A program made the translations under genes and the position numbers. Source: Diadema antillarum (lineage: Eukaryota). Taken from it: DNA of 64,000 nucleotides. The notes beneath the pieces are model-generated. The model was given only the letters and a program-made list of their open reading frames with translations. It made no database searches and was not told the DNA's origin. This document shows positions 15,253-44,677 of this stretch, in pieces (the stretch's first letter is position 1; every line of letters begins with the position of its first letter). The stretch covers positions 62,001 to 126,000 of the forward strand of contig NW_027271515.1 of NCBI RefSeq assembly GCF_040938485.1, written 5' to 3'.

Positions 15253-17634
15253 CACTGGCGTAGCCAGGGGGGGGGGGCGATGGGGGCGGTCGCCCCCCCC
15301 CCCCCTAAGATTTGGACCGGGGATTTGGGAGGCGGAAAAAAAAAATGCATGTATACTGTATGCATGCACATGAAGCGGGTCTCCTTTGCAACCTTTCATC
15401 AAATAAGATATTTTTTTTTTGGAATATTTCACTCAAAGTGTGCACCAGATCGTTGAATTTCAATTCAAAATATGCAAAATCTCTCGTGCTTGGGAGGGGG
15501 TATCCCCCTCCCAAACCCTCCCCCTCTGTGCCTCTTTCCCTAGCTAAGTACACTTTTTAGATTTACAAAAAATTATGAATAATTCTGAGTGCACAAGACT
15601 TATCACTTATATTCCGAAAACTCAAGGTTCCTTCATGTATAAGGGGAATTTCCCCTTTTAATCGACCCTTTCCTCCCTCAGCCCCCCCCCCCCCCCCATT
15701 TTGTTTTTTTTTTTGTGTGTGTGTGATTTCCCAAATGTTGATTCCATCAAATATGCGTATACGAGATATCTCAATTTCAACCTTAAAAAGGCAAAAGCTC
15801 CATCGGAAGGGAAGGGTGGAGATAACACTCGCCAAACGCCTTCTCCCTGCTCGCCCCCCCCCCCCCCCGCCATGCATAGAAGTAGACTGTGGCTATACCC
15901 AGATCGCTTTATTTCAATTATAAAAAACGCAATAAGCTCCGCGAGCGGGAGGGGGAATCCCCCTTCCCCTAAGCTCTACCTCACTAGACTTTATACATAC
16001 ACACAGATGGTGCACATTTGGAATAAGAGCTAAATTCCGTGATTTTAACACTTCGATGAAAAAGTATTGCACCAAAACTTTGCACCAGATCGCTGAATTT
16101 CAGGTCTGAAAACGCAAAATCACCTTCGTGTGGCAGGGGATATGCCCCTATCTACACCCTCGTGTGCATGCTTTTTCTGCTTGATTGCTGAACAGACAGC
16201 GTTCATGATATTCAGTGTAAGAATTAATACAAGAAGACTAGTGTATTTAAATTATACCATTTTATAGGCAAATTGTTCAATAATAATCTACACTAAAATA
16301 TACTGCAACCTTAAACAAGTGGGACTGTTTCAACTCGTTGAAACACGCAAAAACATGCATCAAATTGCACCATTTGCAACGTCAAAATGCAAAAAGTTCT
16401 CACCGTGGGAGGGGGGACACCCCCCTCCCACACCCTCCCCTCCCCCCTCGCTCGCTCCACTCGCTCGGGTTCAGTCGCGTTCATGATATTCAGTGAAAAG
16501 AATTAATACAAGAAGTGCATTTAGATTTCACCATTTTAAAGGCAAATTGTTTCATAATAATCTACACTAAAATATACTGCTACTTTAAACAAGTGGGACT
16601 GTTTCACGTCGATAAAACGAGCAAAAACATGCATCAAATTGCACCATTTGCAATATCAAAATGCAAAAAGTTCTTACCGTCGTGGGAGGGGGGACACCCC
16701 CCTCCCACACCCTCCCCTCCCCCTCGCTCGCTCCGCTCGCCCGGGTTCAGTCGCGTTCATGATATTCAGTGAAAAGAATTAATACAAGAAGTGTGTTTAA
16801 ATTACACCATTTTATAGGCAAATTCTTCAATAATAATCTACATTAAAATATACTGCTATATACCTTAAACAAGTGGGACTGTTTCACGTCGATAAAACGC
16901 GCAAAAACATGCATCAAATTGCACCATTTGCAACAACAAAATGCAAAAAGTTCTTACCGTGGGAGGGGGGACATCCCCCTCCCACACCCTCCCCTACCCC
17001 ACCGCTCGCTCTGCTCGCTCGGGTTCAGTCGCGTTCATGATATTCAGTGAAACGAATTAATACAAGAAGTGTATCTAAATTATACCATTTTATAGGCAAA
17101 TTGTTCAATAATAATCTACACTAAAATAAACTGCTACCATAAACATGTGGGACTGTTTCACGTCGATAAAACGCGCAAAAAACATGCATCAAATTGCACC
17201 ATTTACAACATCAAAATGCAAAAAGTTCTTACCGTGGGAGGGGGGACACCCCCCTCCCACACCCTCCCCTTCCCCGTCGCTCGCTCCGCTCGCCCGGGTT
17301 CAGTCGCGTTCATGATATTCAGTGAAAAGAATTAATACAAGAAGTGTATCTAAATTATACCATTTTATAGGCAAATTGTTCAATAATAATCTACATCAAA
17401 ATAAACTGCTACCATAAACAAGTGGGACTGTTTCACGTCGATTAAACGCGCAAAAACATGCATCAAATTGCACCATTTACAACATCAAAATGCAAAAAGT
17501 TCTTACCGTGGCAGGGGGGACACCCCCCTCCCACACCCTCCCCCCCTCGCTCGCTCCGCTCGCTCGGGCTCGGTCGCTTCGCTCCCTCGCAGACTAACCG
17601 CCCCCCCTAAGATGAAATCCTGGCTACGCCGTTG
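15253..17634. mobile_element. hAT-like non-autonomous element with 8-bp TSD (CGCGGAGC)
   Basis: Termini CACTGGCGTAGCCAGG ... CCTGGCTACGCCGTTG. Identical CGCGGAGC at 15245-15252 and 17635-17642. Confidence 0.85.
16201..17575 (+). repeat. Tandem array of ~277-bp units (~5 copies) inside the hAT-like element
   Basis: GTTCATGATATTCAGTG recurs at 16201, 16479, 16755, 17033 and 17308. Confidence 0.95.
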
Positions 17635-30900: not shown

Positions 30901-31937
30901 CAGTAAAACAAAAGTGATTATCAAATATACTAGCAGCGGTGATGCCTCCAATTTTCACTTCTTCTTTTCGTTGTTGTTCATGGAAACATAATTTGCAAAG
31001 CTGAATGCATAACATTACCATCAATGACCATGGCATTTGGTCAATGAAATTTATTCAGGTCGGATCAGAGTTGTAGGAACGAGGTCAGATTAATCATCAA
31101 CAAAACGGGTAAAGTCACACACTCCGCGGGCTTTCAGTTTATCGTACTGTAGTATGTGTTTTACGCATGCAGTGTTTGTATTCATATGGCACGGGATGAG
31201 CTGCTGCGTAGCTGTTACACACATACACACAAACACACGCACATCCTCTTGGCCTTACACAGTTGGGGCTGTTAGGGCACACTCGTAAGCTCCTATGTGA
31301 ATCCGACCGACCGACCTCATCCTACTTTACCCACTCATTGATCTCGTGTACGTGTGTGTAGGGGTGTGTGTGTGTTGTGTGTGTGTGTGTGTGTGTACGT
31401 GCGTACTGTACATAGCTGTAGTAGTAGCGTGTTATCACATACACACAGTAGTGAGTATGCTAGACCTTTGATGCTATGCTAGCGCAGCGTACCCACCGTG
31501 TGTATTGAAAGACTAGCAAAGAACCTCGTAAAAAGAAGTACGCTGTACCAGCAGTGGCGAGGAACGTTGTTTTCGAGCTTATTTTGAATGCCTTCCGTCG
31601 AACTATGTCTCTTTCATGAAGGATTAAACATTGACCGAGAAGATGGTCTTGATCCTGGACTTAGTGGCTCTACTGGCCACAAACAAAACAATATCCTTTG
31701 GGGCACTGTAATTGAACGACGTCGTCAAGAGGAAAAGCAAAGCCGAATGTACGAGACAGAGCAAATTGATCGCAAACGATCGGGCAGTGAGACCATTGGC
31801 AGGCAGCCCAAGCCCATCGCTGGTTGTGAGCGAGAGTATGAACTTGACGGTACGTTGTTGATTAGATCTGTTTTACCCGAAACTTTGTGTAACAGATACC
31901 CTACTTATCATCTCATAATAGCTTGTTCAGCAAGCTC

Positions 31938-34271
31938 ATGGCCACTCCAAATGAGGTCGACGAGTTCCATGATTCTCAGCAGTGGTGTCCGTTGTGCTCC
32001 GAGCGCATAACAGACCCCAAAATATTGCAATGTTTGCACAGTTTCTGTCGGCCTTGTTTGGAAAAACGTGTTGCTGAGCCAGATCGTGTCAAATGCCCGG
32101 TTTGCATGCATGAAACATCACTCGGTGATATGGGACTGGATGGTCTCACCTCTAGTATCCTCATCAACAATATCCTTGATGTTGTTAGCAGTCATGATGA
32201 TGAATTGGATGGCAGAATGTTTGGCAGTGCAGAAAACCACAGGCGACAGTGCAGCTCCTGCGAAGAAGGTCAGATTGCTACGAGGGTGTGCAAGGACTGC
32301 AGTGAGGCTCTGTGTGAAAGTTGTGTCCTAGCTCACCAGCGTGTGCGCCTCACGAAAGATCACACCATTGTGTACTTGGAAGGGGTAAATGGCAGCAGAC
32401 CTCATGCCAAGGTCCCAATGCTCTATCCCTACCATCAGTATGGCCTTGGGTACCAACCTCCGAAGATGCAACCTGTCTCAGACAGACCACCAAGCTACTG
32501 TGATATCCACAAGGAGATGCTCCGTCTGTATTGCGACACCTGTTACAAGGCCATCTGTCGAGAGTGCACCATGGTAGAGCATAGTGGCCACAGCGTAGTC
32601 TACCTCCAAGATGCTGTTCAAGATAGCAAAGCCATGACCATGCGCATGCTGAATGATGCCAAAGCCAGCTCCAGAGCACTGCAGGAAAGCTTAGCCCACA
32701 CACAAGCAATGGCAGAAAGAGTTGAGATCAGGTGCCAGGCTGTGGCGTCTGAGGTGCGCTCAAATATCCGTCGGCACAAAATGGCACTGGATGAGAGAGA
32801 GAGGGAATTGCTGCGCAAGGTTGAAGTCATTCGGCAAGTAAAAAGCAAATCTCTTCATTCGCAAGCTGATGATATCCAACAGGCAATGGAGAGCTTGACA
32901 GAGTGTATGGGAACTGTTGAGAAAGCTCTTGACTCGGGCACAGATGTGGATGTCCTGAAAACAAAAGAAAAGATCACATCTGAGATGCGTACACTGAAGA
33001 GTCTGAGGGGCTATCTCCAGCCTCAGGAAGATGATGGGATCTTCTTTACTCCACCTGATAGTGTCCTGCACACTGCCATACTATCAATGGGATACATCAG
33101 CAGTAGTGCTTACCCCCCAAATTGCTTTGCCACTGGTGATGGATTGAAGCGTGCCTTGGTTGGAAAGATTGCTTCTTTTATGGTTCACTCTAAAGATCAC
33201 AACAATGAACCGAGATGTGTAGGCGGAGAGGTCTTGGAGGTGACAGTACGTGGGCCAGACGGGGTCTTGTACCCAGCAGAAGTCATCGATCAACAAAATG
33301 GCACATACCTGGGCAGCTATCGACCTACACTCGAAGGACAGCATTACCTGTCAGTTACCATCAAGGGGAAGAATATCATGGACAGTCCATTTGTTATCAC
33401 AGCACGAAATGCACGCAACTTCACCACCATTGGTCCAGCCCTCATGACTTTCGGAGGTGAAGGAGAAGGAGATGGACAGCTTTGCCGACCTTGGGGGATT
33501 GCTGTTGATGCTGATGGCCGTATCATCGTGGCAGACCGCAGCAACAATCGCATCCAGATATTCAACTCAGATGGCTCCTTCAGTCATAAGTTTGGCTCAC
33601 CAGGAACGCGTAATGGACAATTTGATCGCCCAGCAGGAGTTGCAGTTAGTGGTGAAGGCAACATCATCGTGGCAGACAAGGATAATCACCGCTGTCAAGT
33701 CTTCACTGTGCAGGGCCAGTTCCTTTTCAAGTTTGGTGAGAAGGGGAGTAAGAATGGCCAGTTCAACTATCCCTGGGATGTTGCAGTGAACAGCGAGGGG
33801 AAAATCCTGGTTTCAGACACCCGGAACCACAGGATTCAGCAGTTCAACCCAGATGGTACTTTCATCAATAAGTTTGGCTTTGAGGGAGCACTGTGGAAGC
33901 ACTTTGATTCGCCCAGAGGGGTGGCATACAATAATGATGGCCACATAGTTACTACCGACTTCAACAACCACCGTTTGGTAGTGATTCATTCTGACTTCCA
34001 GTCTGCACAGTACCTTGGCTCTGAGGGAACCAACAATGGCCAGTTTCTGAGACCTCAGGGAGTGGCTGTGGATCAGGAGGGCTATATCATCGTTGCCGAC
34101 TCGCGTAACCATCGCATTCAAGTATTTCAGCCAAATGGCAGCTTTTTGTGTAAGTTTGGCATGCCAGGTACAGGCTCTGGGCAGCTTGATCGCCCATCTG
34201 GTATTTGTGTATCTCCTGATGGTGTCATACTGGTTGTAGATTTCGGAAACAATCGTGTGCAAGCATTCTGA
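31938..34271 (+). CDS. TRIM71: E3 ubiquitin-protein ligase TRIM71 / lin-41 (RING, two B-boxes, coiled coil, filamin, six NHL repeats), intronless CDS, 777 aa
   Basis: RING CPLC...CLHSFC..C...CPVC; B-boxes CSSC...C..C...C..C...H...H and CDIH...C..C....C..C....H..H; filamin ATGDGL...; NHL repeats QLCRPWGI, QFDRPAGV, QFNYPWDV, HFDSPRGV, QFLRPQGV, QLDRPSGI. The segment FGFEGALWKHFDSPRGVA matches TRIM71 as I recall it. First in-frame ATG is at 31938, after an in-frame TAA at 31890. Confidence 0.97.
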   Translation: MATPNEVDEFHDSQQWCPLCSERITDPKILQCLHSFCRPCLEKRVAEPDRVKCPVCMHETSLGDMGLDGLTSSILINNILDVVSSHDDELDGRMFGSAENHRRQCSSCEEGQIATRVCKDCSEALCESCVLAHQRVRLTKDHTIVYLEGVNGSRPHAKVPMLYPYHQYGLGYQPPKMQPVSDRPPSYCDIHKEMLRLYCDTCYKAICRECTMVEHSGHSVVYLQDAVQDSKAMTMRMLNDAKASSRALQESLAHTQAMAERVEIRCQAVASEVRSNIRRHKMALDERERELLRKVEVIRQVKSKSLHSQADDIQQAMESLTECMGTVEKALDSGTDVDVLKTKEKITSEMRTLKSLRGYLQPQEDDGIFFTPPDSVLHTAILSMGYISSSAYPPNCFATGDGLKRALVGKIASFMVHSKDHNNEPRCVGGEVLEVTVRGPDGVLYPAEVIDQQNGTYLGSYRPTLEGQHYLSVTIKGKNIMDSPFVITARNARNFTTIGPALMTFGGEGEGDGQLCRPWGIAVDADGRIIVADRSNNRIQIFNSDGSFSHKFGSPGTRNGQFDRPAGVAVSGEGNIIVADKDNHRCQVFTVQGQFLFKFGEKGSKNGQFNYPWDVAVNSEGKILVSDTRNHRIQQFNPDGTFINKFGFEGALWKHFDSPRGVAYNNDGHIVTTDFNNHRLVVIHSDFQSAQYLGSEGTNNGQFLRPQGVAVDQEGYIIVADSRNHRIQVFQPNGSFLCKFGMPGTGSGQLDRPSGICVSPDGVILVVDFGNNRVQAF

Positions 34272-34277
34272 AGTAAA

Positions 34278-34285
34278 TACGGGTA
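34278..34285 (+). promoter_or_regulatory. miR-100/99 8mer seed match (TACGGGTA)
   Basis: Reverse complement of miR-100 nt 2-8 plus A. Only 6 nt past the TRIM71 stop, so efficacy may be reduced. Confidence 0.4.
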
Positions 34286-35774
34286 CTTGAAGTAGGCCTT
34301 TTGTGTTACGAGGTCTGAAGTATTTTATTGGAGGATAATTCCGGGCTTGTGATATCCCCACTTTCGTTTGCATCATATGCCTGTAACACTCTAAAATGTT
34401 GTGTTTGTGTGTAAATTAAAGTGCTCAAAGCAAAGTGTTTAACATTCTCTGACTCAAACTTCCAGGCAGGTTAGCAATTATGATCTGATCAACAATGATA
34501 TGCGGGTACTCAAACAATGATGAGATGTTATTTTTCTGCTACATATCTGCCCTTCATCAATTGAATTGTAATGGCGTTGCAGTTTTATTCTGGCAATTTT
34601 AGGAAAATGAAATAGAGTTTCATCTTGAACAAACTCCTCATTCTGTGTACAAACTGTATGTTTGTGTATACCATGACCTGCACTAAGGCCATCTTGTTCC
34701 GTTTCAAGTACAAGTCTTGGGTTATGAGGATTGCTTTAATATTATGTGCTTATTGTGATTTATGGTAGACAAAAATACAAAGGCTTGCTGCGCATTCGAA
34801 GTATGGGCAAAGAGTTTCCTTGTTACAATTAAATGACTGGAAACGGCTTCTTTTTATCTTTTCAAATTCAGTGTCAGGCCATAACATAATGAACAAGAGA
34901 GACACATAGCGCTTTATGCTCAGCTGAGTGTAACTTTATATGCTGTTTCACATATTGGCCAACTGGTGCAGTAGGCTTTTGCTTGAATACCAGGCATAAG
35001 AACTCGTCATTTTAGCTGGCATCAGTGTTGTGTTGAGATACCAGAGCATCAGTCCAGAAAATGACAAGTACAGACATAATCTGCTGTGTCTGGCATAGTG
35101 TTCCTGCTCTATAAGCCTACTCTCTTTGTGCTGTGCATTATACGATACAAACCGAGCAGATGTTTATCAATTTGATGTGTAAAACGAAAACGAGTACCCA
35201 ACTACAGTGTAACTTATGGATTTAATAGCATGAAATGAGTTTCATATACACTGTTCATTGAAATTAGTAGGGGTTTTTTGTTGGTTTTTTTTTAATGGTT
35301 GTTCAGTGCGACTTGTGCATTTTTTTTTTGTCAAAATGATTGCATAATACATTGAAAAAATGTTGTGCTTTTGTATACCTTAGTTTGCCCTGAAGGCAAT
35401 ACTCGACCCAGACTAACTATTTTCTTAAGATGACATGCTTTGCCTTGACAAACTGCTTGCACTGAATACATCAGATAGTGCATTCACACCACCATCACTA
35501 ATTAGCCAGTTTCAGGCTTCATTTCATTTTGTTACCAAATCTTAAACAATCCTGCTTTCTGAGCATACAGTACATTGTACGTGTTGAAAATGACTACATA
35601 CATTGTACAGTCATCAAAGGGCATGCCCATGACAAGAGTTGATTTATTTATTGTTTCCCCCTTTTTTTAATTTAGTTTTTATTTTGACTGAAAGGGTAAG
35701 GGTTGAAAGGAAGGAGATGAGATTTCTTGATGTGGTTGACCACTCCCAATAACAAACATGGCTGCGCTTGGTAT

Positions 35775-35807
35775 CTACCTCAATGTGATTTGGTGTGCTC
35801 TACCTCA
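35775..35807 (+). promoter_or_regulatory. Tandem let-7 8mer sites (CTACCTCA at 35775 and 35800)
   Basis: Two perfect 8mers 25 nt apart, 1.5 kb downstream of the TRIM71 stop. lin-41/TRIM71 is the classic let-7 target. Confidence 0.8.
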
Positions 35808-36561
35808 AGAAGAAGATTACATGTGGTTCAAGATTTCTTTGTCCACGTCTCAGGTTCAAGAATGATGAAGTGATTGTAAATTGCTTATAAAACATGCATG
35901 TGTTGTAGATTACGAGGTAAATTGTTTATCCTTGAATTGAAGGAAAAAACTGTACAAACTTGCAGCTGCATTTACTGATATTATATGATGAACAGGCTTC
36001 AAGTGCAAAGCATTTTGTTGCCATCGCTTGATTAAAAATGCAAATTTATATTATTTAGATATAATATTCATTTATATGTATTGTGACTTAGCAAAAAAAA
36101 AGAGTAAATTGTTGTGCAGGGATTTGTGTGGGTTCATTTTAGTTGGGCATATAAATGTGAAAATATTAACTACAATAGTAAAGTTTTGCTGTCATTTTGG
36201 ATGTTACTCCCCAGTTGTTACTTAGTATTACCATATAAACCTCTCATTGTCATAGACAATTTAAATTTTTTGTATTGAGCAATGCAACAGAATCCTGAAT
36301 ATTGTACAGCTAGCTTCATTTTCAGCTAATCCAAGTGGCGTTACTGCTGACAATATAAAGCTGTATTACATGTGAAATGTTTTTCATACCAAGTCTTGCA
36401 GCAGTTACATTGTATATGATTTGATTATTGTGTGCATGCATTATATATAAATGTGGCTACCAGTTGCACATTGTTTGATACAGTGTTGTACATGTACCAA
36501 CCACATTTGTAAAAGTTGGAGGCACTTTTATTTCATTCTTCAGGTTTATCAGTTTGTTATG

Positions 36562-36569
36562 CTCAGGGA
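36562..36569 (+). promoter_or_regulatory. miR-125/lin-4 8mer seed match (CTCAGGGA)
   Basis: Perfect 8mer in the putative TRIM71 3' UTR. Confidence 0.55.
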
Positions 36570-37956
36570 TGCCTTTTTAACTGATAATGCTCCCAATGAA
36601 ATCTAAGCTATTATTGCAGAGGGAGCCTAAAATGTAACACTAAATGTTTCTTTTAGTTGAAATATGCCACATTTTCTAACATTATGCTGACTTTGCCAAA
36701 GATGATGTAGTATTAGCTGCCAAGGGAAATATACTGCAGCCTGAGTTAAAATACCTTAACTGTCCACTGTAAGATGTAAGGTCACATTTGTTTATTTATT
36801 TGTTTGTTTGTTGCAGTTACCTTTCTTAATTTCATCAACATTATTGCCCACTCATTCACAGCTTTGACATTTTGTTTTAGCGATCCCTCCAGTATTTAGT
36901 GAGCTCAGTCGGTGTGCATAATTGTTTACCATATTATTCAAATTGTGTTTTTGCAGTGATACTGTGTGTTTGCATGATGATTATGAAATACCCCACTTTT
37001 GACAGTACATGTACCACGTCGAAGCATGTTGGTCCAGTCAGGCTTTCCATATAGAGTTATTTTGTTAGGCATGTAAGTTGTAAAATGTCATTGTTTGAGC
37101 CCTCAAGATTTTCTGCACATCGTATACGCCTTAGACCCAGTTAGCGAGGGGATTCAAGAGTAGCAGCTCAATTAATTCGCCACCCACCCAAGTACATTAA
37201 AAAAACCACAGATAGTACCGGTCTGCAAAAACAGTATGTGTATCGGAGCTTAAAGGATATTAAAAGACATTTTTTAAAGCCAAAACTATACGATCCCTTT
37301 AAATGCTCATTAGTAATGGTTGACTCTCGACACTCATTATTCTTTGGCCATTTGTGTACAGTGTAGGCCTACTTACACAGAGATCAGTGATTACACAGAG
37401 AAAGTACACTTTTGTAGTACCCAATTTGTTACAGATATTCTCGAATACACCCAAGCTGGGCCAGACTTTTCTCCGTGGTATCCCCATGTTACCAGGTCTT
37501 TAAAGCCACTTCCCTGAAAATCACATAACTCCCATTTTTGTTGTTGTTGTCCTTTTGTTTTTTAAGTGTGTTTACACGTATGTAACTGCCACACTGCTAC
37601 AGTGAAGATTCATTGGTTTTGAAGCACAGCAGAATATGATAACAGGAGGCTTATGATCGTAAGTATGGAATGAGGCATGACTAATCTTGGATCATGGGGA
37701 AATTGGCTGATGTCACTATAATAACAAGCCTAGGGTATAGTTAGTCCTAAACTTTTGAATTTGATTCAAAATAGATTTAACTTTTATCACGTCTATCATT
37801 TACCACAATGCACCGTAGTTCCATTATGTTCCAAAGTGTGCTCTCTGAAGGGCCTCCTATACATTGTACGTGTGAAATGTGAAATACTGCAGATGCTGAA
37901 ATTTCACAGAATTTAAAAGAAAAGATTTTGTACATCCTCCCACAATCAAAATGATA

Positions 37957-37959
37957 ATA

Positions 37960-38007
<48 letters not shown>

Positions 38008-38110
38008 TAAATATAATCGTAATCATAATCATAATCATAATGTATAATATAATAATAATAATAGTAATAATATAATACAATAATGATAATAATAATAATA
38101 ATAATAATAA
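37957..38110. repeat. (AAT)n microsatellite
   Basis: Long imperfect AAT/AATC run. Confidence 0.95.
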
Positions 38111-38860
38111 AGAATAATGATAATGAAGAATTGAATAACCTCCTAAGATATCAGGTAAAATATCGGGTACAGTGTATGAAGTACAACTCTATAAGAGAAC
38201 TGCAATGTATGTGTACATTCAACATGGCCTGGCAGGCAGCAGCTGCACACAGTTGCCCATCCTGCTGTGTGTACATGTATGCAAGCCTACATGCATGTTT
38301 AGTAATGGGAGCTGTATGGTATCCGCATTCCTGATCACAAATATAACCACCTGCAAAACTGATTTAACAACTCACAATTCGCAATTTTTCTTGTAATTTT
38401 TTTTTAAATTTTTTTTTGCATCTACAGTAATCACCAAGGCATACTGGTTTCCTAATTATCAATAGCTAAGAATGTAGAGGCCATTGCCTATCTCTGACTA
38501 CCTTGCCACAATTAATTCATAAAGAGGGGTGGAGATGGGGAGTCTGTCTCAAGTTTTTGCGTTTCATGAGACTGGGATCAGTTGCGGGATGTTATGTGTT
38601 CCAAAGCCACCAACAGTCATATTCAGGGCATGTTATGTAGTTGGAGGTGAAGTTTTGTTTTAAATCATTACTCCTTAAGTCACTCCCTTCAGTGTACCAG
38701 ATCACATCTGAAAACAGCTGAATAACTTATGTTAACTCTTAATTAAGTTCGAAACTACCGATGTGAGAAGTAGAAGTAATGAGGATTCCTTGATTTCCTC
38801 AGCATGAAAAGGTCAGCTGGCCTTGTGCTGCAATGCTGACTATGCTGATAGCAGGCATTT

Positions 38861-38868
38861 CTACCTCA
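38861..38868 (+). promoter_or_regulatory. let-7 8mer seed match (CTACCTCA)
   Basis: Third perfect let-7 8mer downstream of TRIM71. Weaker matches at 40079 (7mer-m8) and 40264 (7mer-A1). Confidence 0.55.
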
Positions 38869-41414
38869 AGACTCAGTATTACCAGTACACCTCAAATCCT
38901 GTTTTTTTTTCCCCATCCTGTTTTCCACCAAGCTAGTTGTATTATCTATGCGATGAATTAACAGATCTATTCGTGATTTGAGTGATATCATCTCTGAAAT
39001 AGAACAAACTCTCATTGGTAGCTTGATTGCATACAATTTTAGGAACAAGTCCTCGATTCATAGGATGTATGACACACGGACTGCAATTTCAGTTGCCATA
39101 TAAGCACAAAAACACATTAAAAGGATGGCATCCTCCTTCTCATTCATCATCAACATCAAATAGTCTTTATCTCATGCTTTCACAATAAGGCACAAACTGC
39201 TTTTTAACTTTCTATAAACCAAGATTATTAGAATTTTTGTGATTGCATAAAGAGAAAATGGGTAGTTTCAATCACAAAATGTTTAATTACAGTGCAGATA
39301 CACTGTATGTCCATCCTAACGTACACATTACAGTAAATTAATAGAAATAAGAATTTCTGTAAAAATTTGCTCAGGTTTGATTGAACACAATACAAATTGT
39401 ACCATCAGCATCAAGGAGACTTTTTTTCCTTACTTTTTTGAAGTCATATGCCAATAAAGATGCCAAATAACTGACACCCAGCATGAATAAGATTCAGGCG
39501 ACATAAGACTATAAACTCAGTAAACATTTACATACACTCATTGACTCATGCTGTGTATACTGCCTGTATACACGTATGTTGTGTCATTTAGTTATTTAAC
39601 TGACTCAATGCATTTGGGGTATCAAAATGTCATCAATATTTTATGAAAGTATAGTACAGTTTGATTAGATGTGTGTTTAATGAATTGCCTTCATAATTCA
39701 AATGTTTGTTTACGGTTCAAGGAGTCTTTTTTGTGTTCTGACCAATTTTGGTTCGTTTCATTTCACACAATGTACACAGCACCTCCTGCACAATTTCCTT
39801 TTCTTTTGTATGCCTTTGTCATTATTATTGTATGCATTATTCAGTATTTGTAGAGTGCACCCAGTTCATGTATAATGTTTAATGTCTGGTCAGGTCAATC
39901 AAATCATATTGGTATATTTGTGAAAGACGTGCTGCAGGAGAAGGGATTTGTGGGTCTGTCCCTATCATTTTAGATCTCTTTAACATCTAGACGTCTAGTT
40001 GCTCACCTCATACACCTAAATGTTTATCTTGTATATGAAATTGTTAATTAGAGATTGTCTGAATTTGCAATTGTTGTGCTACCTCTGAAAAAAATGACAG
40101 CTTTTTAAAAAGAATGTCAATATATTCATGTTCAGTGTGGTAATGTAATGAGAGTATTTGAATTTCTAAGAAATGACTTTTAAAAATGATGTGTATATCC
40201 ATGTTATATGTGTATCGTGATCTGAGGTGCAAAGTTGTGTAGATTGACTGGGAGAAGAGACTTTACCTCAGACACACACTGGTAAAAGAGACAGGAAACT
40301 ATTATCTCAGGCTAAAACTCTAAGGTAGTCATACCACAAAGAAATACAGTTGAAGCAAAGCTTATGTGCTGTTGTGTGCTAGTAATACCGCAAACAGTCT
40401 AAGACTGATGTGCTCAGTTTTCAACGTTTCATGCATGTATCTGCTGTCATTGCTCTAAGCAAGATGGGTGAAAAAAACCCAGCTGCCTACGCCATAGTGT
40501 CGCCTTCTGTGCTTGCAATGTAAAACAGCGCTTGCTTCAAAGTATACCCCTCACTCTTGTTCCTGCCATGTTATATGCTTCAGGTTTGCTCAGTAAGAGG
40601 AAAAAGTGTTGTGATGTTGTTGTGTTTTTTATATGAAATGCTGCAAGAGTGATTAATACAGGGTGCCATTCCTGTTGTGAACATGCTTATGTTTTGTTTG
40701 ATTTATTTCCTAGTTTGCTACATGTATGTTGAATGAATACAGTAACTTTCTTTGGAGCAGTCTTATTGCTTGTTCTGAAATATCTAAACAGCACCTGATT
40801 CTGTGTATGGCACAATGATTTTCTGGCTTTGAAATAGTCCTGATACAGATCCAAAATGGATGACAGATTCCAAACTCAGTATATAGTCCTTTGATAATGA
40901 GTAGATTTATTTCTTTTGATTGAATTTGTGATTTGTAAGACTAATGCTGCAGGGTGCTAGAATTTCTTCAGGCCCAAATAATGAATGTAAGTTTGTAAGT
41001 TGTGACCTCATTCGCAGAGACTTACATTGTATCTACCATGGTGCATGTATGCTTTAAGTTTGTCTGTTTTTTATCAGAGAGAAGCTGTTTCAAAGTGCAT
41101 AGTATGCGGCTGTTCTGTACAAAATCAAAACCAAACTGATTCACCACTTCCTATGGGGCTGCAGCAATGTGTATTGGTATACTTTAACATCAGTGAGGGG
41201 TTGATGGTGTTGTTGATTATATCTCTTTTCTTTGTGTTTTATTGGCATGGGTTCACATGGTTTCTTAGAAGATTCTGGGTTCTCCAGAAATGATGAAACA
41301 TCACCTTCTTTCCATTCTATTTGTAATACTGAAGGATCATTGCACTAATACAGTTAGAGCATATATTCTTATTTGCCCTTTAAAATATATAATTTCTTTC
41401 ACATGAATCTGACA

Positions 41415-41422
41415 TACGGGTA
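41415..41422 (+). promoter_or_regulatory. miR-100/99 8mer seed match (TACGGGTA)
   Basis: Second perfect miR-100 8mer, about 50 nt upstream of an AATAAA. Confidence 0.5.
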
Positions 41423-41465
41423 TAATACAAAGAGAACAGCAAACAGATAAAGAATCAATATTTGT

Positions 41466-41475
41466 ATTAAATAAA
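41466..41475 (+). terminator. Candidate distal poly(A) signal of TRIM71 (overlapping ATTAAA/AATAAA)
   Basis: ATTAAATAAA. Other AATAAA at 39453 and 43004. The site actually used cannot be determined from sequence. Confidence 0.4.
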
Positions 41476-41724
41476 GAATGTAGCATGTGAACATGAACTT
41501 AAGGGGCTACCTCTGCTGTTTACACAGCAACTGGTAAGTGACATCTCATAGCAGCTGGTACAGGTATTACTCATTTTAACTCCATCGTGTTTTCAGAACA
41601 CTTGACGTTGTGCAGTATTCAAGTCATCAAGCCAGTAACGTACTGGTAGCCAAAGTGGTTCAGGAAACTTACAATTCGTAATGGAACAATGTTAAGGCAG
41701 TTGTTTGAGAAGGGCATGGGTAAA

Positions 41725-42001
41725 CAGGAGCCGCGGAACTTTTTTGGGGGTAGGGGGCTGTGGACTGGGTGTGTGTGTCATGGGTAAATGGACCCCATCC
41801 CCCCCCCCCCCCCCAAAAAAAAAACCGACTATCATGGACATATACCTTCGGAAAGTATAGGGTGTTGCGATTTTTCCCCTGTTCTTCTGTCCCTCGTCCC
41901 CCCCCCCCCATATGTGTGGTTTTTTTGTTGTTTTTGTTGTTGTTTTTTGAGACCCCAAAAGTGTGTGACACTGCCCATGCCCTATGGTTCCGCGGCCCCT
42001 G
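41725..42001. mobile_element. hAT-like MITE with 5-bp TSD (GTAAA)
   Basis: CAGGAGCCGCGGAAC ... GTTCCGCGGCCCCTG, flanked by GTAAA on both sides. Confidence 0.85.
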
Positions 42002-42207
42002 GTAAAGACGCATTTCAGATTCTGTGATGATCTGTGAGTTTCACATACAGGTAGAGATGAGTGAGAGATCATCTCGGGAAGGAAGCTGGTACGCTCTAGG
42101 TGTGCCAACTGAAATGTATACCGGTAGGTTGGAACAGGTTCTTCCACCTCCCTGGCTAGAGTGCAATGAGTGACCATTTCAGTGCTGTTGCCATGCAAGA
42201 ATGCATC

Positions 42208-42241
<34 letters not shown>

Positions 42242-44677
42242 AAGTCATAGAGATAATGTCAGCATCTCAGTCCACCAACAGTATTTTGTATTTGCTCTTC
42301 CTGCTCTGAAATCAAGTAAGAAATCGGATCAATCCTGTGGTCAAACCGCCGAGTTACCCTTGCACTTGAAACAGCCTCTTGTGTGTGAATGTAGCAGCAG
42401 CATCATGACCTTTTCTTCTATTGTGATAAATGTATGCACAGCTACAATTATGTTCTTAGGAATTTGCAATAATGCATTCTGAGCATGGTATGGAAGATTA
42501 GCAGTAATGAGTGATTTCTAGAGTATTGACTTAACCATGAAAGTAATTAATATGATTTAGCATTGACCGTGAGGAATTTTTCTTTGTACGTGTAGAAACA
42601 TCATTCATGGCATTTAAAAATCATGTTCTCTGTATTCCGACTGCAACCTGGTGGTTGTAGAATCCAGATAGCATTTGATATTTGATATTCTAGGGGAACA
42701 CTGAAGTTACTCAGTTTTGCCCTTTAATCATAGTATGACAGATGTTCCAGCAATTTCAAGTCATAGTATTGACACTCATTAGATACAGAGACTTGGAAAA
42801 TGCAGTGGCAATGGCGTTCATGTTACTGTGGTCCAGAAAATGTTAGGTCTATGCATTAATTCAGAACTAGGATGTATTTTAAAACTTGTGACTGTAAGTA
42901 GCTATACCAGTAGGAAAAATGATTACCGGTAGTTCATTCACCATCATAAATTGATTATATTTCATTTCATTGCATTTGTTGTTGCACAGTTTCATTGAAT
43001 GAAAATAAATGTTGAGAATGGCACCAACATTTGTTGTAAAGTTTTATTCTTTCTGTCCTTCAGGTAACTATCTTACAATCCTGAGAGTGTCAAATTGTAT
43101 GTGGCAAACAGCAAAAGTCAAAACAGAAAGGCAAAACAGAAACACATTTTTTGTCTTCAGTTGTCGCACATAGCTGGTACGTTGCACAACGTCATTGGCG
43201 ACAAGATTGATTCCCACTCTTGGCACATTCCGTATTTGTTATGACACGTTGACATAGCTGGCAAAGTTTAATTCCTCTAGAGAAACGTAAATTGATGTTG
43301 ATATTGGTGAGATTCCTCTATTGTGTACAATCAGGAAGCGTTTGTTGATGTGAGCTACAAGTAGATCTGTTTTCATGAGTTAGCTCTGAGAAGACTGGTT
43401 ATTTCAAGAATGTGCTGATGTTTTCTGTGTAAATTGGTTAATTTTTGAAGCATCTGACAGTGAGGCTGGGCTGTGTTGTCTGTTGTGTATTAAAATCAAT
43501 TGGATTCTAAAGTACAGTATGCTATATATTTAGCATGTCTAATTTGTGCAAATTTGGACTTCCCGACAATTTCATGAGTGGTTTAATTGTGTATCAGTTC
43601 ACACGGGTAGGCATTCCCAGATACTGTTTACATGTACTGTGTACTGCATACCAGTACATATGCATGTGGGCATGTATGTTGCATTCATGTCAATGTTAAT
43701 ATTTTTGTGTATTGTTAATAGTTGTGAATAGCACCCGATTCACAAAATTTGCAAACGTATAAAACTGCAAACATGGTGTATACAGTCTTGGTGATTGGCC
43801 ACCACATTTGGGGTTATTTTCAGCTACATTTTCATGTCGTCTTCTCCTATCTCTGCAAATTTCCCTTCTTTTCTCTTCTTCCATTTACCTTCACACTTCC
43901 CCACCCTGTCAAAAAGAGATATGTATCGGTACACTGAGTATTTTGCCAGCAAAAAGACTTGAGAGATACAGGTAGATAGAAATTATAGTGGGATAGAAAA
44001 ATGCATACATGTGGGCACCATGCAGTGTTTCTTGGAATCATAAGCATTTGATAAATACATGTACAAAATGTGCATTATGTGTACATCCATCGGCATGCTG
44101 AGATGTGTTGATGTACTATGTACACACGACTATCACTGACGTTACATGTGCTCACATATCGACATAGTATAGGAAGTCCAGGCTGAACTCCAGGCAGTGT
44201 GGTTGCTGATGAGATCAGGGAGGTGAATGCACTGCCATGCTACACAAATGTGTTACATCAGGGAGCACCTCCCTGGTTACATGCAGTGTGTTGGGTTGGC
44301 TGCATGTACCAAAGCGTAGTGTTGCACACTCAATGTACGTTCCATTTATATTATACTGGTACATATTTCATGTGATTCCATTTAACAATCACTTGTTCCT
44401 CTCGGCCATATCCAGCATGTATTGCAAACACTGTATCATCGTGAAGTTCCGCGGTGTTGGTCATGTCACGCAGGGGAACCTCTTTGTTTTACCACAGTGA
44501 ATGACTCTGATCAGGGAATTGCATCATATTACATAACAGCTTGCTTGCCCTTTGATTCCCTGTATCTTCTGAGGACTACAGCCCCAGTTGGTTGGGCTGC
44601 TAATTCTAAAGCATGATGAATATTTGCTGAAGGCAAAATGGGCTCTGAGCCAAAGAATTTCCTTTTCCTCTACTTAA

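What the first reader, a model, noticed from the sequence alone, without database searches (positions are those of the whole stretch)
34272..41500. Putative 7.2-kb TRIM71 3' UTR targeted by the whole miR-100/let-7/miR-125 cluster
Seen: between the stop and the AATAAA at 41470 there are six perfect 8mers: let-7 at 35775, 35800 and 38861; miR-100 at 34278 and 41415; miR-125 at 36562. There are also let-7 7mers at 40079 and 40264. My rough estimate at ~36% GC is about 0.08 chance hits per 8mer over this length. Established: these three miRNAs form a conserved bilaterian polycistron, and let-7 and lin-4/miR-125 regulate lin-41/TRIM71. Inference: one transcript reads out all three cluster members, a full heterochronic timing module in an invertebrate deuterostome, possibly linked to metamorphosis or regeneration.
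Basis: partly seen in the sequence, partly recalled or inferred. Interest (0 to 1): 0.8.

Follow-up and report, generated by a model that had tools for sequence, protein, structure and literature searches.

The report
Sea urchin TRIM71 UTR microRNA sites

Summary
Six 8mers lie in 7.2 kb, against 0.10 expected from dinucleotide shuffles; no shuffle gave more than 2. None lies on the minus strand of the 64-kb window.

The ORF 31938-34271 is a clear TRIM71/LIN-41 orthologue. The genome is Diadema antillarum.

Comparison with 11 other animals supports function. In six echinoderm and hemichordate orthologues, the miR-100 8mer is the top-ranked of all 8-mers downstream of the stop. It is also the only 6-8-mer shared by all six within 110 nt of the stop. 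let-7 words rank first across 11 bilaterians, and the miR-125 8mer is the first non-let-7 word.

Two details fail:
- The distal miR-100 8mer (41415), the AATAAA at 41470 and the let-7 7mer at 41507 are absent from D. setosum.
- The UTR end is unproven. A conserved AATAAA at 43004 is a better candidate, giving about 8.8 kb.

RNA evidence is only suggestive.

Co-targeting of TRIM71 by let-7 and miR-125 is established from worm to mouse. miR-100 targeting is predicted and partly tested in mammals. This is therefore a new member of a known kind. One oddity remains: in all four echinoderm classes sampled, the miR-100 site sits within 21 nt of the stop codon.

The parts
31938..34271 (+). TRIM71/LIN-41 coding sequence: single exon, 777 aa, stop TGA at 34269-34271
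   Evidence: ORF. Pfam finds RING, two B-boxes, filamin and 6 NHL repeats. 99% identical to D. setosum TRIM71-like. Best solved-structure match is TRIM71 filamin-NHL, E 1.5e-177, against about 1e-50 for TRIM2/3. The gene call has the same span in the public assembly.
34278..34285 (+). Stop-proximal miR-100 8mer (TACGGGTA), 7 nt after the stop
   Evidence: Lies in a 93-nt block identical in D. setosum. The same 8mer lies +7 in Amphiura, +14 in Acanthaster, +1 in Anneissia, +78 in Saccoglossus and +101 in Ptychodera. It is the only 6-8-mer shared by all six within 110 nt of the stop.
35775..35807 (+). Pair of let-7 8mers (35775-35782 and 35800-35807), starts 25 nt apart
   Evidence: Inside a 265-nt block identical in D. 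setosum. Paired let-7 8mers 35-36 nt apart occur in Amphiura, Saccoglossus and Ptychodera, and 27 nt apart in the pheasant.
36562..36569 (+). miR-125 8mer (CTCAGGGA)
   Evidence: Lies in a 78-nt perfect block against D. setosum. The miR-125 8mer is present downstream of TRIM71 in 8 of 11 species and ranks first among non-let-7 words. It lies 27-38 nt after the stop in hemichordates and vertebrates.
38861..38868 (+). Third let-7 8mer
   Evidence: Lies in a 60-nt perfect block against D. setosum. Lies inside the piece 38696-38886 of a contig from a more distant relative (run X1).
40079..40085 (+). let-7 7mer-m8
   Evidence: Conserved in D. setosum within the 95-98% identity island 39750-41000. 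The region is covered by the X1 contig and by low-depth X11 contigs.
40264..40270 (+). let-7 7mer-A1
   Evidence: Conserved in D. setosum within a 79-nt perfect block.
41415..41422 (+). Distal miR-100 8mer, of doubtful function
   Evidence: Present in all three D. antillarum haplotigs, but the aligned word in D. setosum is TGCCAGTA. Comparable distal miR-100 8mers followed by let-7 sites exist in Acanthaster and Amphiura.
41470..41475 (+).
   Evidence: Present, but it reads AATGAA in D. setosum and local identity is only 0.75.
   Evidence: Removed by a deletion and substitution in D. setosum.
42250..43080 (+). Conserved distal block ending in a conserved AATAAA (43004-43009) with a U/GU-rich stretch downstream; candidate true 3' end near 43030
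   Evidence: 92-97% identical to D. setosum in all but one 100-nt bin from 42300 (42200 bin 77%), against a background of 82-85%. The AATAAA sits in a perfect block of 78 nt in the printed alignment. A 406-nt contig of run X1, depth 79.6, covers 42583-42925.

Best explanation
This is the 3' untranslated region of the single-exon TRIM71/lin-41 gene of Diadema antillarum. It is at least about 6 kb long and probably 7-9 kb. It carries canonical seed-match sites through which Argonaute loaded with let-7 (three 8mers and two 7mers), miR-125 (one 8mer) and miR-100 (one conserved 8mer directly after the stop, plus one lineage-variable distal 8mer) would repress the mRNA. These three miRNAs come from one ancient cluster and rise late in development. 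The expected outcome is shut-down of TRIM71 as cells leave the proliferative, undifferentiated state.

Shown here: the sites, their enrichment, their strand specificity and their conservation.

Inferred: that the whole stretch is one transcript, that the miRNAs bind, and that binding represses.
For: - Gene identity.
- Enrichment: 6 8mers against 0.10 expected, maximum 2 in 5000 shuffles. None on the minus strand in 64 kb.
- Within-genus conservation: 5 of 6 8mers and both in-UTR 7mers are kept, in perfect blocks of 36-265 nt.
- Unbiased ranking of all 8-mers over 9 kb downstream of TRIM71 in six ambulacrarians: TACGGGTA ranks first, and let-7 words rank 2-4. Over 11 bilaterians, let-7 words are present in 11/11 and CTCAGGGA in 8/11, the first non-let-7 word.
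- TACGGGTA is the only 6-8-mer shared within 110 nt of the stop by all six ambulacrarians. The per-species chance is about 2e-4.
- Ptychodera packs miR-125, let-7, miR-100 and miR-125 sites into the first 115 nt.
- Long UTRs are expected. 8mers lie 4.7-6.2 kb downstream in starfish and brittle star, and the human TRIM71 3'UTR is about 6 kb (PMC11977657).
- Possible transcription: a 3246-nt contig (depth 52.8) and a 406-nt contig (depth 79.6) from run X1 lie on 38696-41255 and 42583-42925. Small same-species contigs from X11 lie at 39348-39552 and 40516-40834.
Against: - No run is on record as RNA. X1 is only guessed to be RNA, and contigs give no strand or ends. Continuity from the stop codon to the distal sites is therefore not shown.
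- Conserved ATTAAA signals at 34415, 34828 and 36031 could give short isoforms that lack most sites.
- The two Diadema species are too close for a strong test. 55% of all UTR 8-mers are perfectly conserved, so P(at least 5 of 6) is 0.17.
- The proximal miR-100 site lies within 15 nt of the stop, where sites are usually avoided or ineffective (PMC3492042).
- I could not check that the miRNA cluster is present in this genome.
Confidence: 0.8

Rival explanations
1. Only the let-7 sites, and perhaps the miR-125 site, work as miRNA sites. The stop-adjacent TACGGGTA is conserved for another reason, such as a binding site for an RNA-binding protein or a translation-termination context element. It would be shielded from miR-100 by the terminating ribosome.
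For: In all four echinoderm classes sampled the word lies at +1 to +14 from the stop. That is inside the ribosome shadow, where miRNA sites are usually avoided (PMC3492042). Nothing here shows miR-100 binding.
Against: - The conserved word is exactly the 8mer for miR-100, with diverged flanks and a shifting position and reading frame.
- In hemichordates it lies at +78 and +101, outside the shadow.
- Second copies lie kilobases downstream in three echinoderms.
- Mammalian TRIM71 responds to miR-100 mimics (PMC11977657).
Confidence: 0.1
2. The mRNA mostly uses proximal poly(A) sites, so the UTR is 0.2-1.8 kb. The distal conserved blocks (38.7-43 kb) would then be something else, such as an enhancer or a separate non-coding transcript. 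Only the proximal miR-100 site, and perhaps the let-7 pair, would matter.
For: Conserved ATTAAA signals at 34415, 34828 and 36031. No strand-resolved RNA evidence. Conservation continues past any single candidate end.
Against: - Sense-strand-only let-7 8mer and 7mers sit in the distal blocks and are conserved.
- Other echinoderms have their let-7 and miR-100 8mers 4.7-6.2 kb downstream.
- The X1 contigs have similar depth across 38.7-41.3 and 42.6-42.9 kb.
- There is no ORF of substance and no Rfam family downstream.
Confidence: 0.15
3. The seed matches are chance occurrences in AT-rich intergenic DNA.
For: Single 7mers are not individually significant. One of the six 8mers is not conserved.
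Against: Zero of 5000 shuffles reach even 3 8mers. The sites are strand-specific. The same words top an unbiased 8-mer ranking across phyla.
Confidence: 0.01

Closest known systems
let-7 regulation of lin-41/TRIM71 through paired 3'UTR sites (C. elegans LCS1/LCS2; zebrafish, mouse, human TRIM71)
   Same: An orthologous gene, several let-7 sites in the 3'UTR, and a closely spaced pair 25 nt apart here. Pairs are 27-36 nt apart in the other species examined.
   Different: The Diadema sites are perfect 8mers with little 3' pairing; from my own memory, the worm sites are bulged with 3' compensatory pairing. The pair lies 1.5 kb from the stop, against about 80-170 nt in vertebrates. It has not been tested experimentally in any echinoderm that I could find.
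let-7 plus lin-4/miR-125 co-targeting of lin-41 (worm to mouse; PMC4979967)
   Same: A miR-125 8mer lies in the same UTR as the let-7 sites.
   Different: In hemichordates, vertebrates, Lingula and Haliotis the miR-125 8mer lies 27-176 nt after the stop. In Diadema it is at +2291 and in Amphiura at +3918. No miR-125 site was found in Acanthaster. In echinoderms the stop-proximal position is taken by miR-100.
Mammalian TRIM71 as a miR-99/100 and miR-125b target (PMC11977657; TargetScan/miRDB/ENCORI prediction cited in PMC12158875)
   Same: A long TRIM71 3'UTR (about 6 kb in human) with seed matches for miR-100 and miR-125 as well as let-7.
   Different: In the bird and the ray examined, the miR-100 match is a single distal 7mer about 5.1 kb from the stop. 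In ambulacrarians it is an 8mer next to the stop and the best-conserved word in the UTR.
Drosophila let-7-Complex co-targeting (let-7 and miR-125 on chinmo; PMC4979967)
   Same: Members of one polycistronic cluster converge on one mRNA.
   Different: The target gene is different, and miR-100 was not shown to share that target.

Membership tests
TRIM71/LIN-41 (TRIM-NHL protein) | N-terminal RING finger | tested here: met
   zf-C3HC4 at residues 17-56, E 7e-8.
TRIM71/LIN-41 (TRIM-NHL protein) | Two B-boxes | tested here: met
   ANCHR-like B-box at 105-143 and zf-B_box at 185-221.
TRIM71/LIN-41 (TRIM-NHL protein) | Coiled coil between B-box 2 and the filamin domain | not tested
   Residues 222-390 have no Pfam hit. 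They align to the coiled-coil parts of TRIM3 and TIF1-beta chains. No coiled-coil prediction was run.
TRIM71/LIN-41 (TRIM-NHL protein) | Filamin repeat followed by six NHL repeats | tested here: met
   Filamin at 393-486. NHL in six stretches, E 1.3e-61.
TRIM71/LIN-41 (TRIM-NHL protein) | Closer to TRIM71 than to the paralogues TRIM2/3, Brat or Thin | tested here: met
   Solved-structure matches: TRIM71 E 1.5e-177, Thin 4.6e-70, TRIM3 2.8e-54, TRIM2 2e-50. All named best hits across animals are TRIM71. It shares a 90% cluster with S. purpuratus TRIM71.
Canonical animal miRNA 8mer site | Perfect match to miRNA nucleotides 2-8 with an A opposite nucleotide 1 | tested here: met
   Six such sites. 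The miRNA sequences are from my own knowledge. The miR-100 6mer ACGGGT and the let-7 6mer TACCTC are confirmed by 10.1101/2024.07.19.604269.
Canonical animal miRNA 8mer site | Lies in the 3'UTR at least about 15 nt past the stop codon | tested here: not met
   Not met for the proximal miR-100 site (positions +7 to +14). Met for all other sites if the UTR extends that far. The rule is cited from PMC3492042.
Canonical animal miRNA 8mer site | Preferential conservation in orthologous UTRs | tested here: met
   Not met for 41415.
Canonical animal miRNA 8mer site | Site lies in the mature mRNA | tested here: inconclusive
   Only contigs from runs of unrecorded type were available. No strand or end information.
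Canonical animal miRNA 8mer site | Repression depends on the miRNA | not testable with these tools
   Needs reporters, miRNA inhibition or CLIP.
[quoted passage not shown] | All three miRNAs exist, clustered and expressed, in this species | not testable with these tools
   The genome outside the window is not searchable here, and the scan's notes hold nothing on it. A related urchin expresses all three (PMC3048847).

The most novel reading that the evidence does not exclude
[quoted passage not shown] In echinoderms the miR-100 8mer has been held for roughly half a billion years (my estimate, not derived here) inside the footprint of the terminating ribosome. It could then be bound only on mRNAs that are not being translated, acting as a translation-gated lock that keeps already silenced or stored TRIM71 mRNA off. 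On this reading it is not an ordinary repressive site.
Probability: 0.12. Interest if true: 0.75.

Novelty: new member of a known kind. Interest (0 to 1): 0.5.

Why it matters
miR-100 is the oldest conserved animal miRNA (PMC12407057), yet, to my knowledge, it has few agreed conserved targets. The ambulacrarian data show that its 8mer is the single best-conserved word after the TRIM71 stop codon. Mammalian predictions also list TRIM71 as a miR-100 target. The let-7/lin-41 timing switch may therefore have been a three-miRNA switch early in deuterostome evolution. That would give a concrete hypothesis for why the three genes stay clustered.

It also gives an experimentally tractable case. TRIM71 exists in S. 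purpuratus and Lytechinus, where, to my knowledge, UTR reporters and miRNA blocking are routine. The unusual stop-adjacent position is a natural test of the ribosome-shadow rule.

Against this, the let-7 and miR-125 parts are textbook and the miR-100 part is already predicted in mammals, so the general principle is not new.

Tried and rejected
- RNA evidence. Two run searches found no run recorded as RNA. X2 and X4 proved to be D. setosum whole-genome data: depth is uniform across and beyond the UTR, contig totals are 830-930 Mb, and their k-mer shares (0.42 and 0.21) equal those computed from the D. setosum locus. They say nothing about transcription.
- Within-genus conservation is too weak to serve as a test (P 0.17).
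- An Rfam scan of 28-48 kb found nothing.
- There is no ORF of substance downstream to 64 kb.
- A synteny check against the starfish MCM gene upstream found no match in the window's first 31.5 kb.
- The idea that model urchins lack TRIM71 was rejected. They were hidden in the 90% cluster of the D. setosum protein.
- The stop-adjacent 8mer is not a coding extension or readthrough motif, because its frame differs in Acanthaster.
- No canonical intron signals were seen in the one contig skip: the ends are CA..GT.
Full report
**Observation**

- let-7 8mers at 35775, 35800 and 38861.
- miR-100 8mers at 34278 and 41415.
- A miR-125 8mer at 36562.
- let-7 7mers at 40079 (m8) and 40264 (A1).
- AATAAA at 41470.

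None of the three 8mers occurs on the minus strand anywhere in the 64 kb. The only other plus-strand copies are at 15976 and at 34054 in the CDS.

5000 dinucleotide-preserving shuffles of 34272-41500 give 0.061, 0.011 and 0.030 expected 8mers. The total is 0.10 against 6 observed. No shuffle exceeded 2, and none had all three miRNAs.

**The gene and the genome**

ORF 31923-34271 has its likely ATG at 31938 and encodes 777 aa in one exon. It has a RING, two B-boxes, a filamin repeat and six NHL repeats. It is 99% identical to D. setosum TRIM71-like, and every named top hit across animals is TRIM71. Its filamin-NHL part matches solved TRIM71 at E 1.5e-177, against about 1e-50 for TRIM2/3.

The identical protein lies on three contigs of GCA_040938485.1. 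The window equals L002. That assembly is Diadema antillarum with both haplotypes retained (PMC13511894), so L001 and L003 are haplotigs. All sites are present in all three.

**Comparison within the genus**

Background identity to D. setosum (L004) is about 82-85%. Islands of higher identity lie at:
- 34250-34500 (99%)
- 35750-36250 (99.6% and 96%)
- 36500-37000 (98% and 95%)
- 39750-41000 (95-98%)
- 42250-43000 (93-96%)

Conserved in D. setosum: the proximal miR-100 site, the let-7 pair (inside a 265-nt perfect block), the miR-125 site, the third let-7 8mer and both let-7 7mers.

Not conserved:
- The distal miR-100 8mer; the aligned word is TGCCAGTA.
- The AATAAA at 41470, which reads AATGAA.
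- The let-7 7mer at 41507.

Taken alone this test is weak. 55% of all UTR 8-mers are perfectly conserved, so P(at least 5 of 6) is 0.17.

**Comparison across phyla**

I fetched 10 kb downstream of TRIM71 in D. setosum, Acanthaster, Amphiura, Anneissia, Saccoglossus, Ptychodera, Branchiostoma, Lingula, Haliotis, Phasianus and Mobula. Positions below are nt after the stop.

*miR-100.* The 8mer lies at +7 (Diadema), +7 (Amphiura), +14 (Acanthaster), +1 (Anneissia), +78 (Saccoglossus) and +101 (Ptychodera). It is absent as an 8mer from amphioxus, Lingula and Haliotis. The pheasant has a 7mer-m8 at +5088 and the ray a 7mer-A1 at +5179.

*miR-125.* The 8mer lies at +27 (Saccoglossus), +38 (Ptychodera), +28 (Phasianus), +38 (Mobula), +176 (Lingula) and +114 (Haliotis). 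In Diadema it is at +2291 and in Amphiura at +3918.

*let-7.* Paired 8mers 25-36 nt apart occur in Diadema, Amphiura, Saccoglossus and Ptychodera. The pheasant has a pair 27 nt apart.

*Unbiased ranking.* I ranked all 8-mers by presence across the six ambulacrarians, weighted by a first-order Markov expectation. TACGGGTA comes first, followed by three let-7 site words. Across the window plus ten other species (D. setosum left out), let-7 words are present in all, and CTCAGGGA, in 8 of 11, is the first non-let-7 word.

*Near the stop.* TACGGGTA is the only 6-, 7- or 8-mer shared by all six ambulacrarians within 110 nt of the stop. The per-species chance is about 2e-4. The flanks are not alignable and the reading frame differs in Acanthaster. 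This is the signature of selection on the word itself.

**Extent of the UTR**

This is the weak point. No sequencing run is recorded as RNA.

- X2 and X4 are D. setosum genomic data, so they carry no information about transcription.
- X1 comes from a more distant relative and is guessed to be RNA. Its contigs total 176 Mb. It has a 3246-nt contig at depth 52.8, colinear with 38696-41255, and a 406-nt contig at depth 79.6 on 42583-42925. Such depth in so small a contig set fits a transcriptome better than a genome survey, but that is my inference.
- X11 is the same species, with 41 Mb of contigs. It has depth 2-3 pieces at 39348-39552 and 40516-40834.

The AATAAA at 41470 is not conserved. An AATAAA at 43004 lies in a perfect block of 78 nt in the printed alignment, followed by a U/GU-rich stretch. 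It would give an 8.76-kb UTR.

Conserved ATTAAA signals at 34415, 34828 and 36031 allow short isoforms.

Distal 8mers 4.7-6.2 kb downstream in starfish and brittle star, and a human UTR of about 6 kb (PMC11977657), make a long UTR plausible.

**Mechanism**

The sites are seed-type with modest predicted 3' pairing; duplex energies are -12.5 to -18.1 kcal/mol. The likely mechanism is ordinary Argonaute-mediated repression of TRIM71 by three co-transcribed, late-rising miRNAs.

The one unusual feature is that the echinoderm miR-100 site lies within 21 nt of the stop. Sites in that zone are usually avoided because of the ribosome shadow (PMC3492042).

**What is already known**

- let-7 on lin-41 is the founding example of miRNA regulation.
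- let-7 plus lin-4/miR-125 co-targeting of lin-41 is described from worm to mouse (PMC4979967).
- Mammalian TRIM71 is a database-predicted miR-100 target. It falls after miR-100 and miR-125b mimics, though without a reporter test (PMC11977657, PMC12158875).

I found no paper on echinoderm or hemichordate TRIM71 UTR sites in the held library. That is not proof that none exists.

**Verdict**

The finding is real and functional-looking, and it is a new member of a known kind. The comparative result on miR-100 adds moderate interest. The 7.2-kb end point and the distal miR-100 site are not supported. The link to metamorphosis or regeneration is untested.

Noticed in passing
L001, L002, L003 (GCA_040938485.1 contigs JBFRCO010000018.1, ...627.1, ...008.1): Three contigs carry the identical TRIM71 protein and flanks that are 97-100% identical over most of the 15-kb alignment (two 250-nt bins dip to 85-93% in L003). 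The published assembly retains both haplotypes, with 84% of BUSCO genes duplicated, so these are haplotigs or redundant contigs and not paralogues.
   Followed up: yes
L006:9981, L012:9983, L011:9805, L007:9676: A let-7 8mer lies about 20 nt upstream of the TRIM71 start codon in Amphiura and Haliotis, and 200-320 nt upstream in Lingula and Saccoglossus. These may be 5'UTR let-7 sites. There is no equivalent just upstream of the Diadema ATG.
   Followed up: no
window 34054-34061 (and 32600-32606): A miR-125 8mer inside the CDS, 218 nt before its end, overlaps the conserved peptide RPQGV. The 7mer is kept at the same place in Acanthaster, Amphiura, Ptychodera and Lingula, but not in Anneissia or Saccoglossus. 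A let-7 7mer in the CDS is shared with Haliotis at the same position. Both are probably by-products of protein conservation.
   Followed up: partly
let-7 8mers downstream of TRIM71 in the window, L005-L014: The two bases 5' of the let-7 8mer are biased to A-T. T occurs at -1 in 15 of 25 sites (P 0.005) and A at -2 in 16 of 25. TCTACCTC and ATCTACCT occur in all 11 species. These bases are not complementary to let-7 nucleotides 9-10. Unexplained.
   Followed up: partly
window 43540-43755: A dispersed repeat, probably a transposon fragment. Contig word depth rises to thousands in the D. setosum genomic runs, and many contigs end here with unrelated flanks.
   Followed up: no
window 41750-42250: A low-complexity insert with C16 and C32 runs and T/G-rich repeats. 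It is unalignable with D. setosum and interrupts the otherwise conserved distal region. It produces spurious proline- and glycine-rich ORFs on both strands.
   Followed up: no
window 37950-38138: An AAT microsatellite (about 59 copies, imperfect) in the least conserved part of the putative UTR.
   Followed up: no
L008 (Ptychodera) 12328+38 to +115: Within 115 nt of the stop, the acorn worm packs a miR-125 8mer, a let-7 8mer two bases later, a miR-100 8mer, and a miR-125 7mer abutting it. This is the most compact three-miRNA module seen.
   Followed up: partly
downstream of TRIM71 in six ambulacrarians: Other words shared beyond expectation are GAAACTAC (6 of 6) and AAGCTGCC (5 of 6). They have no common position or obvious miRNA assignment.
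   Followed up: partly
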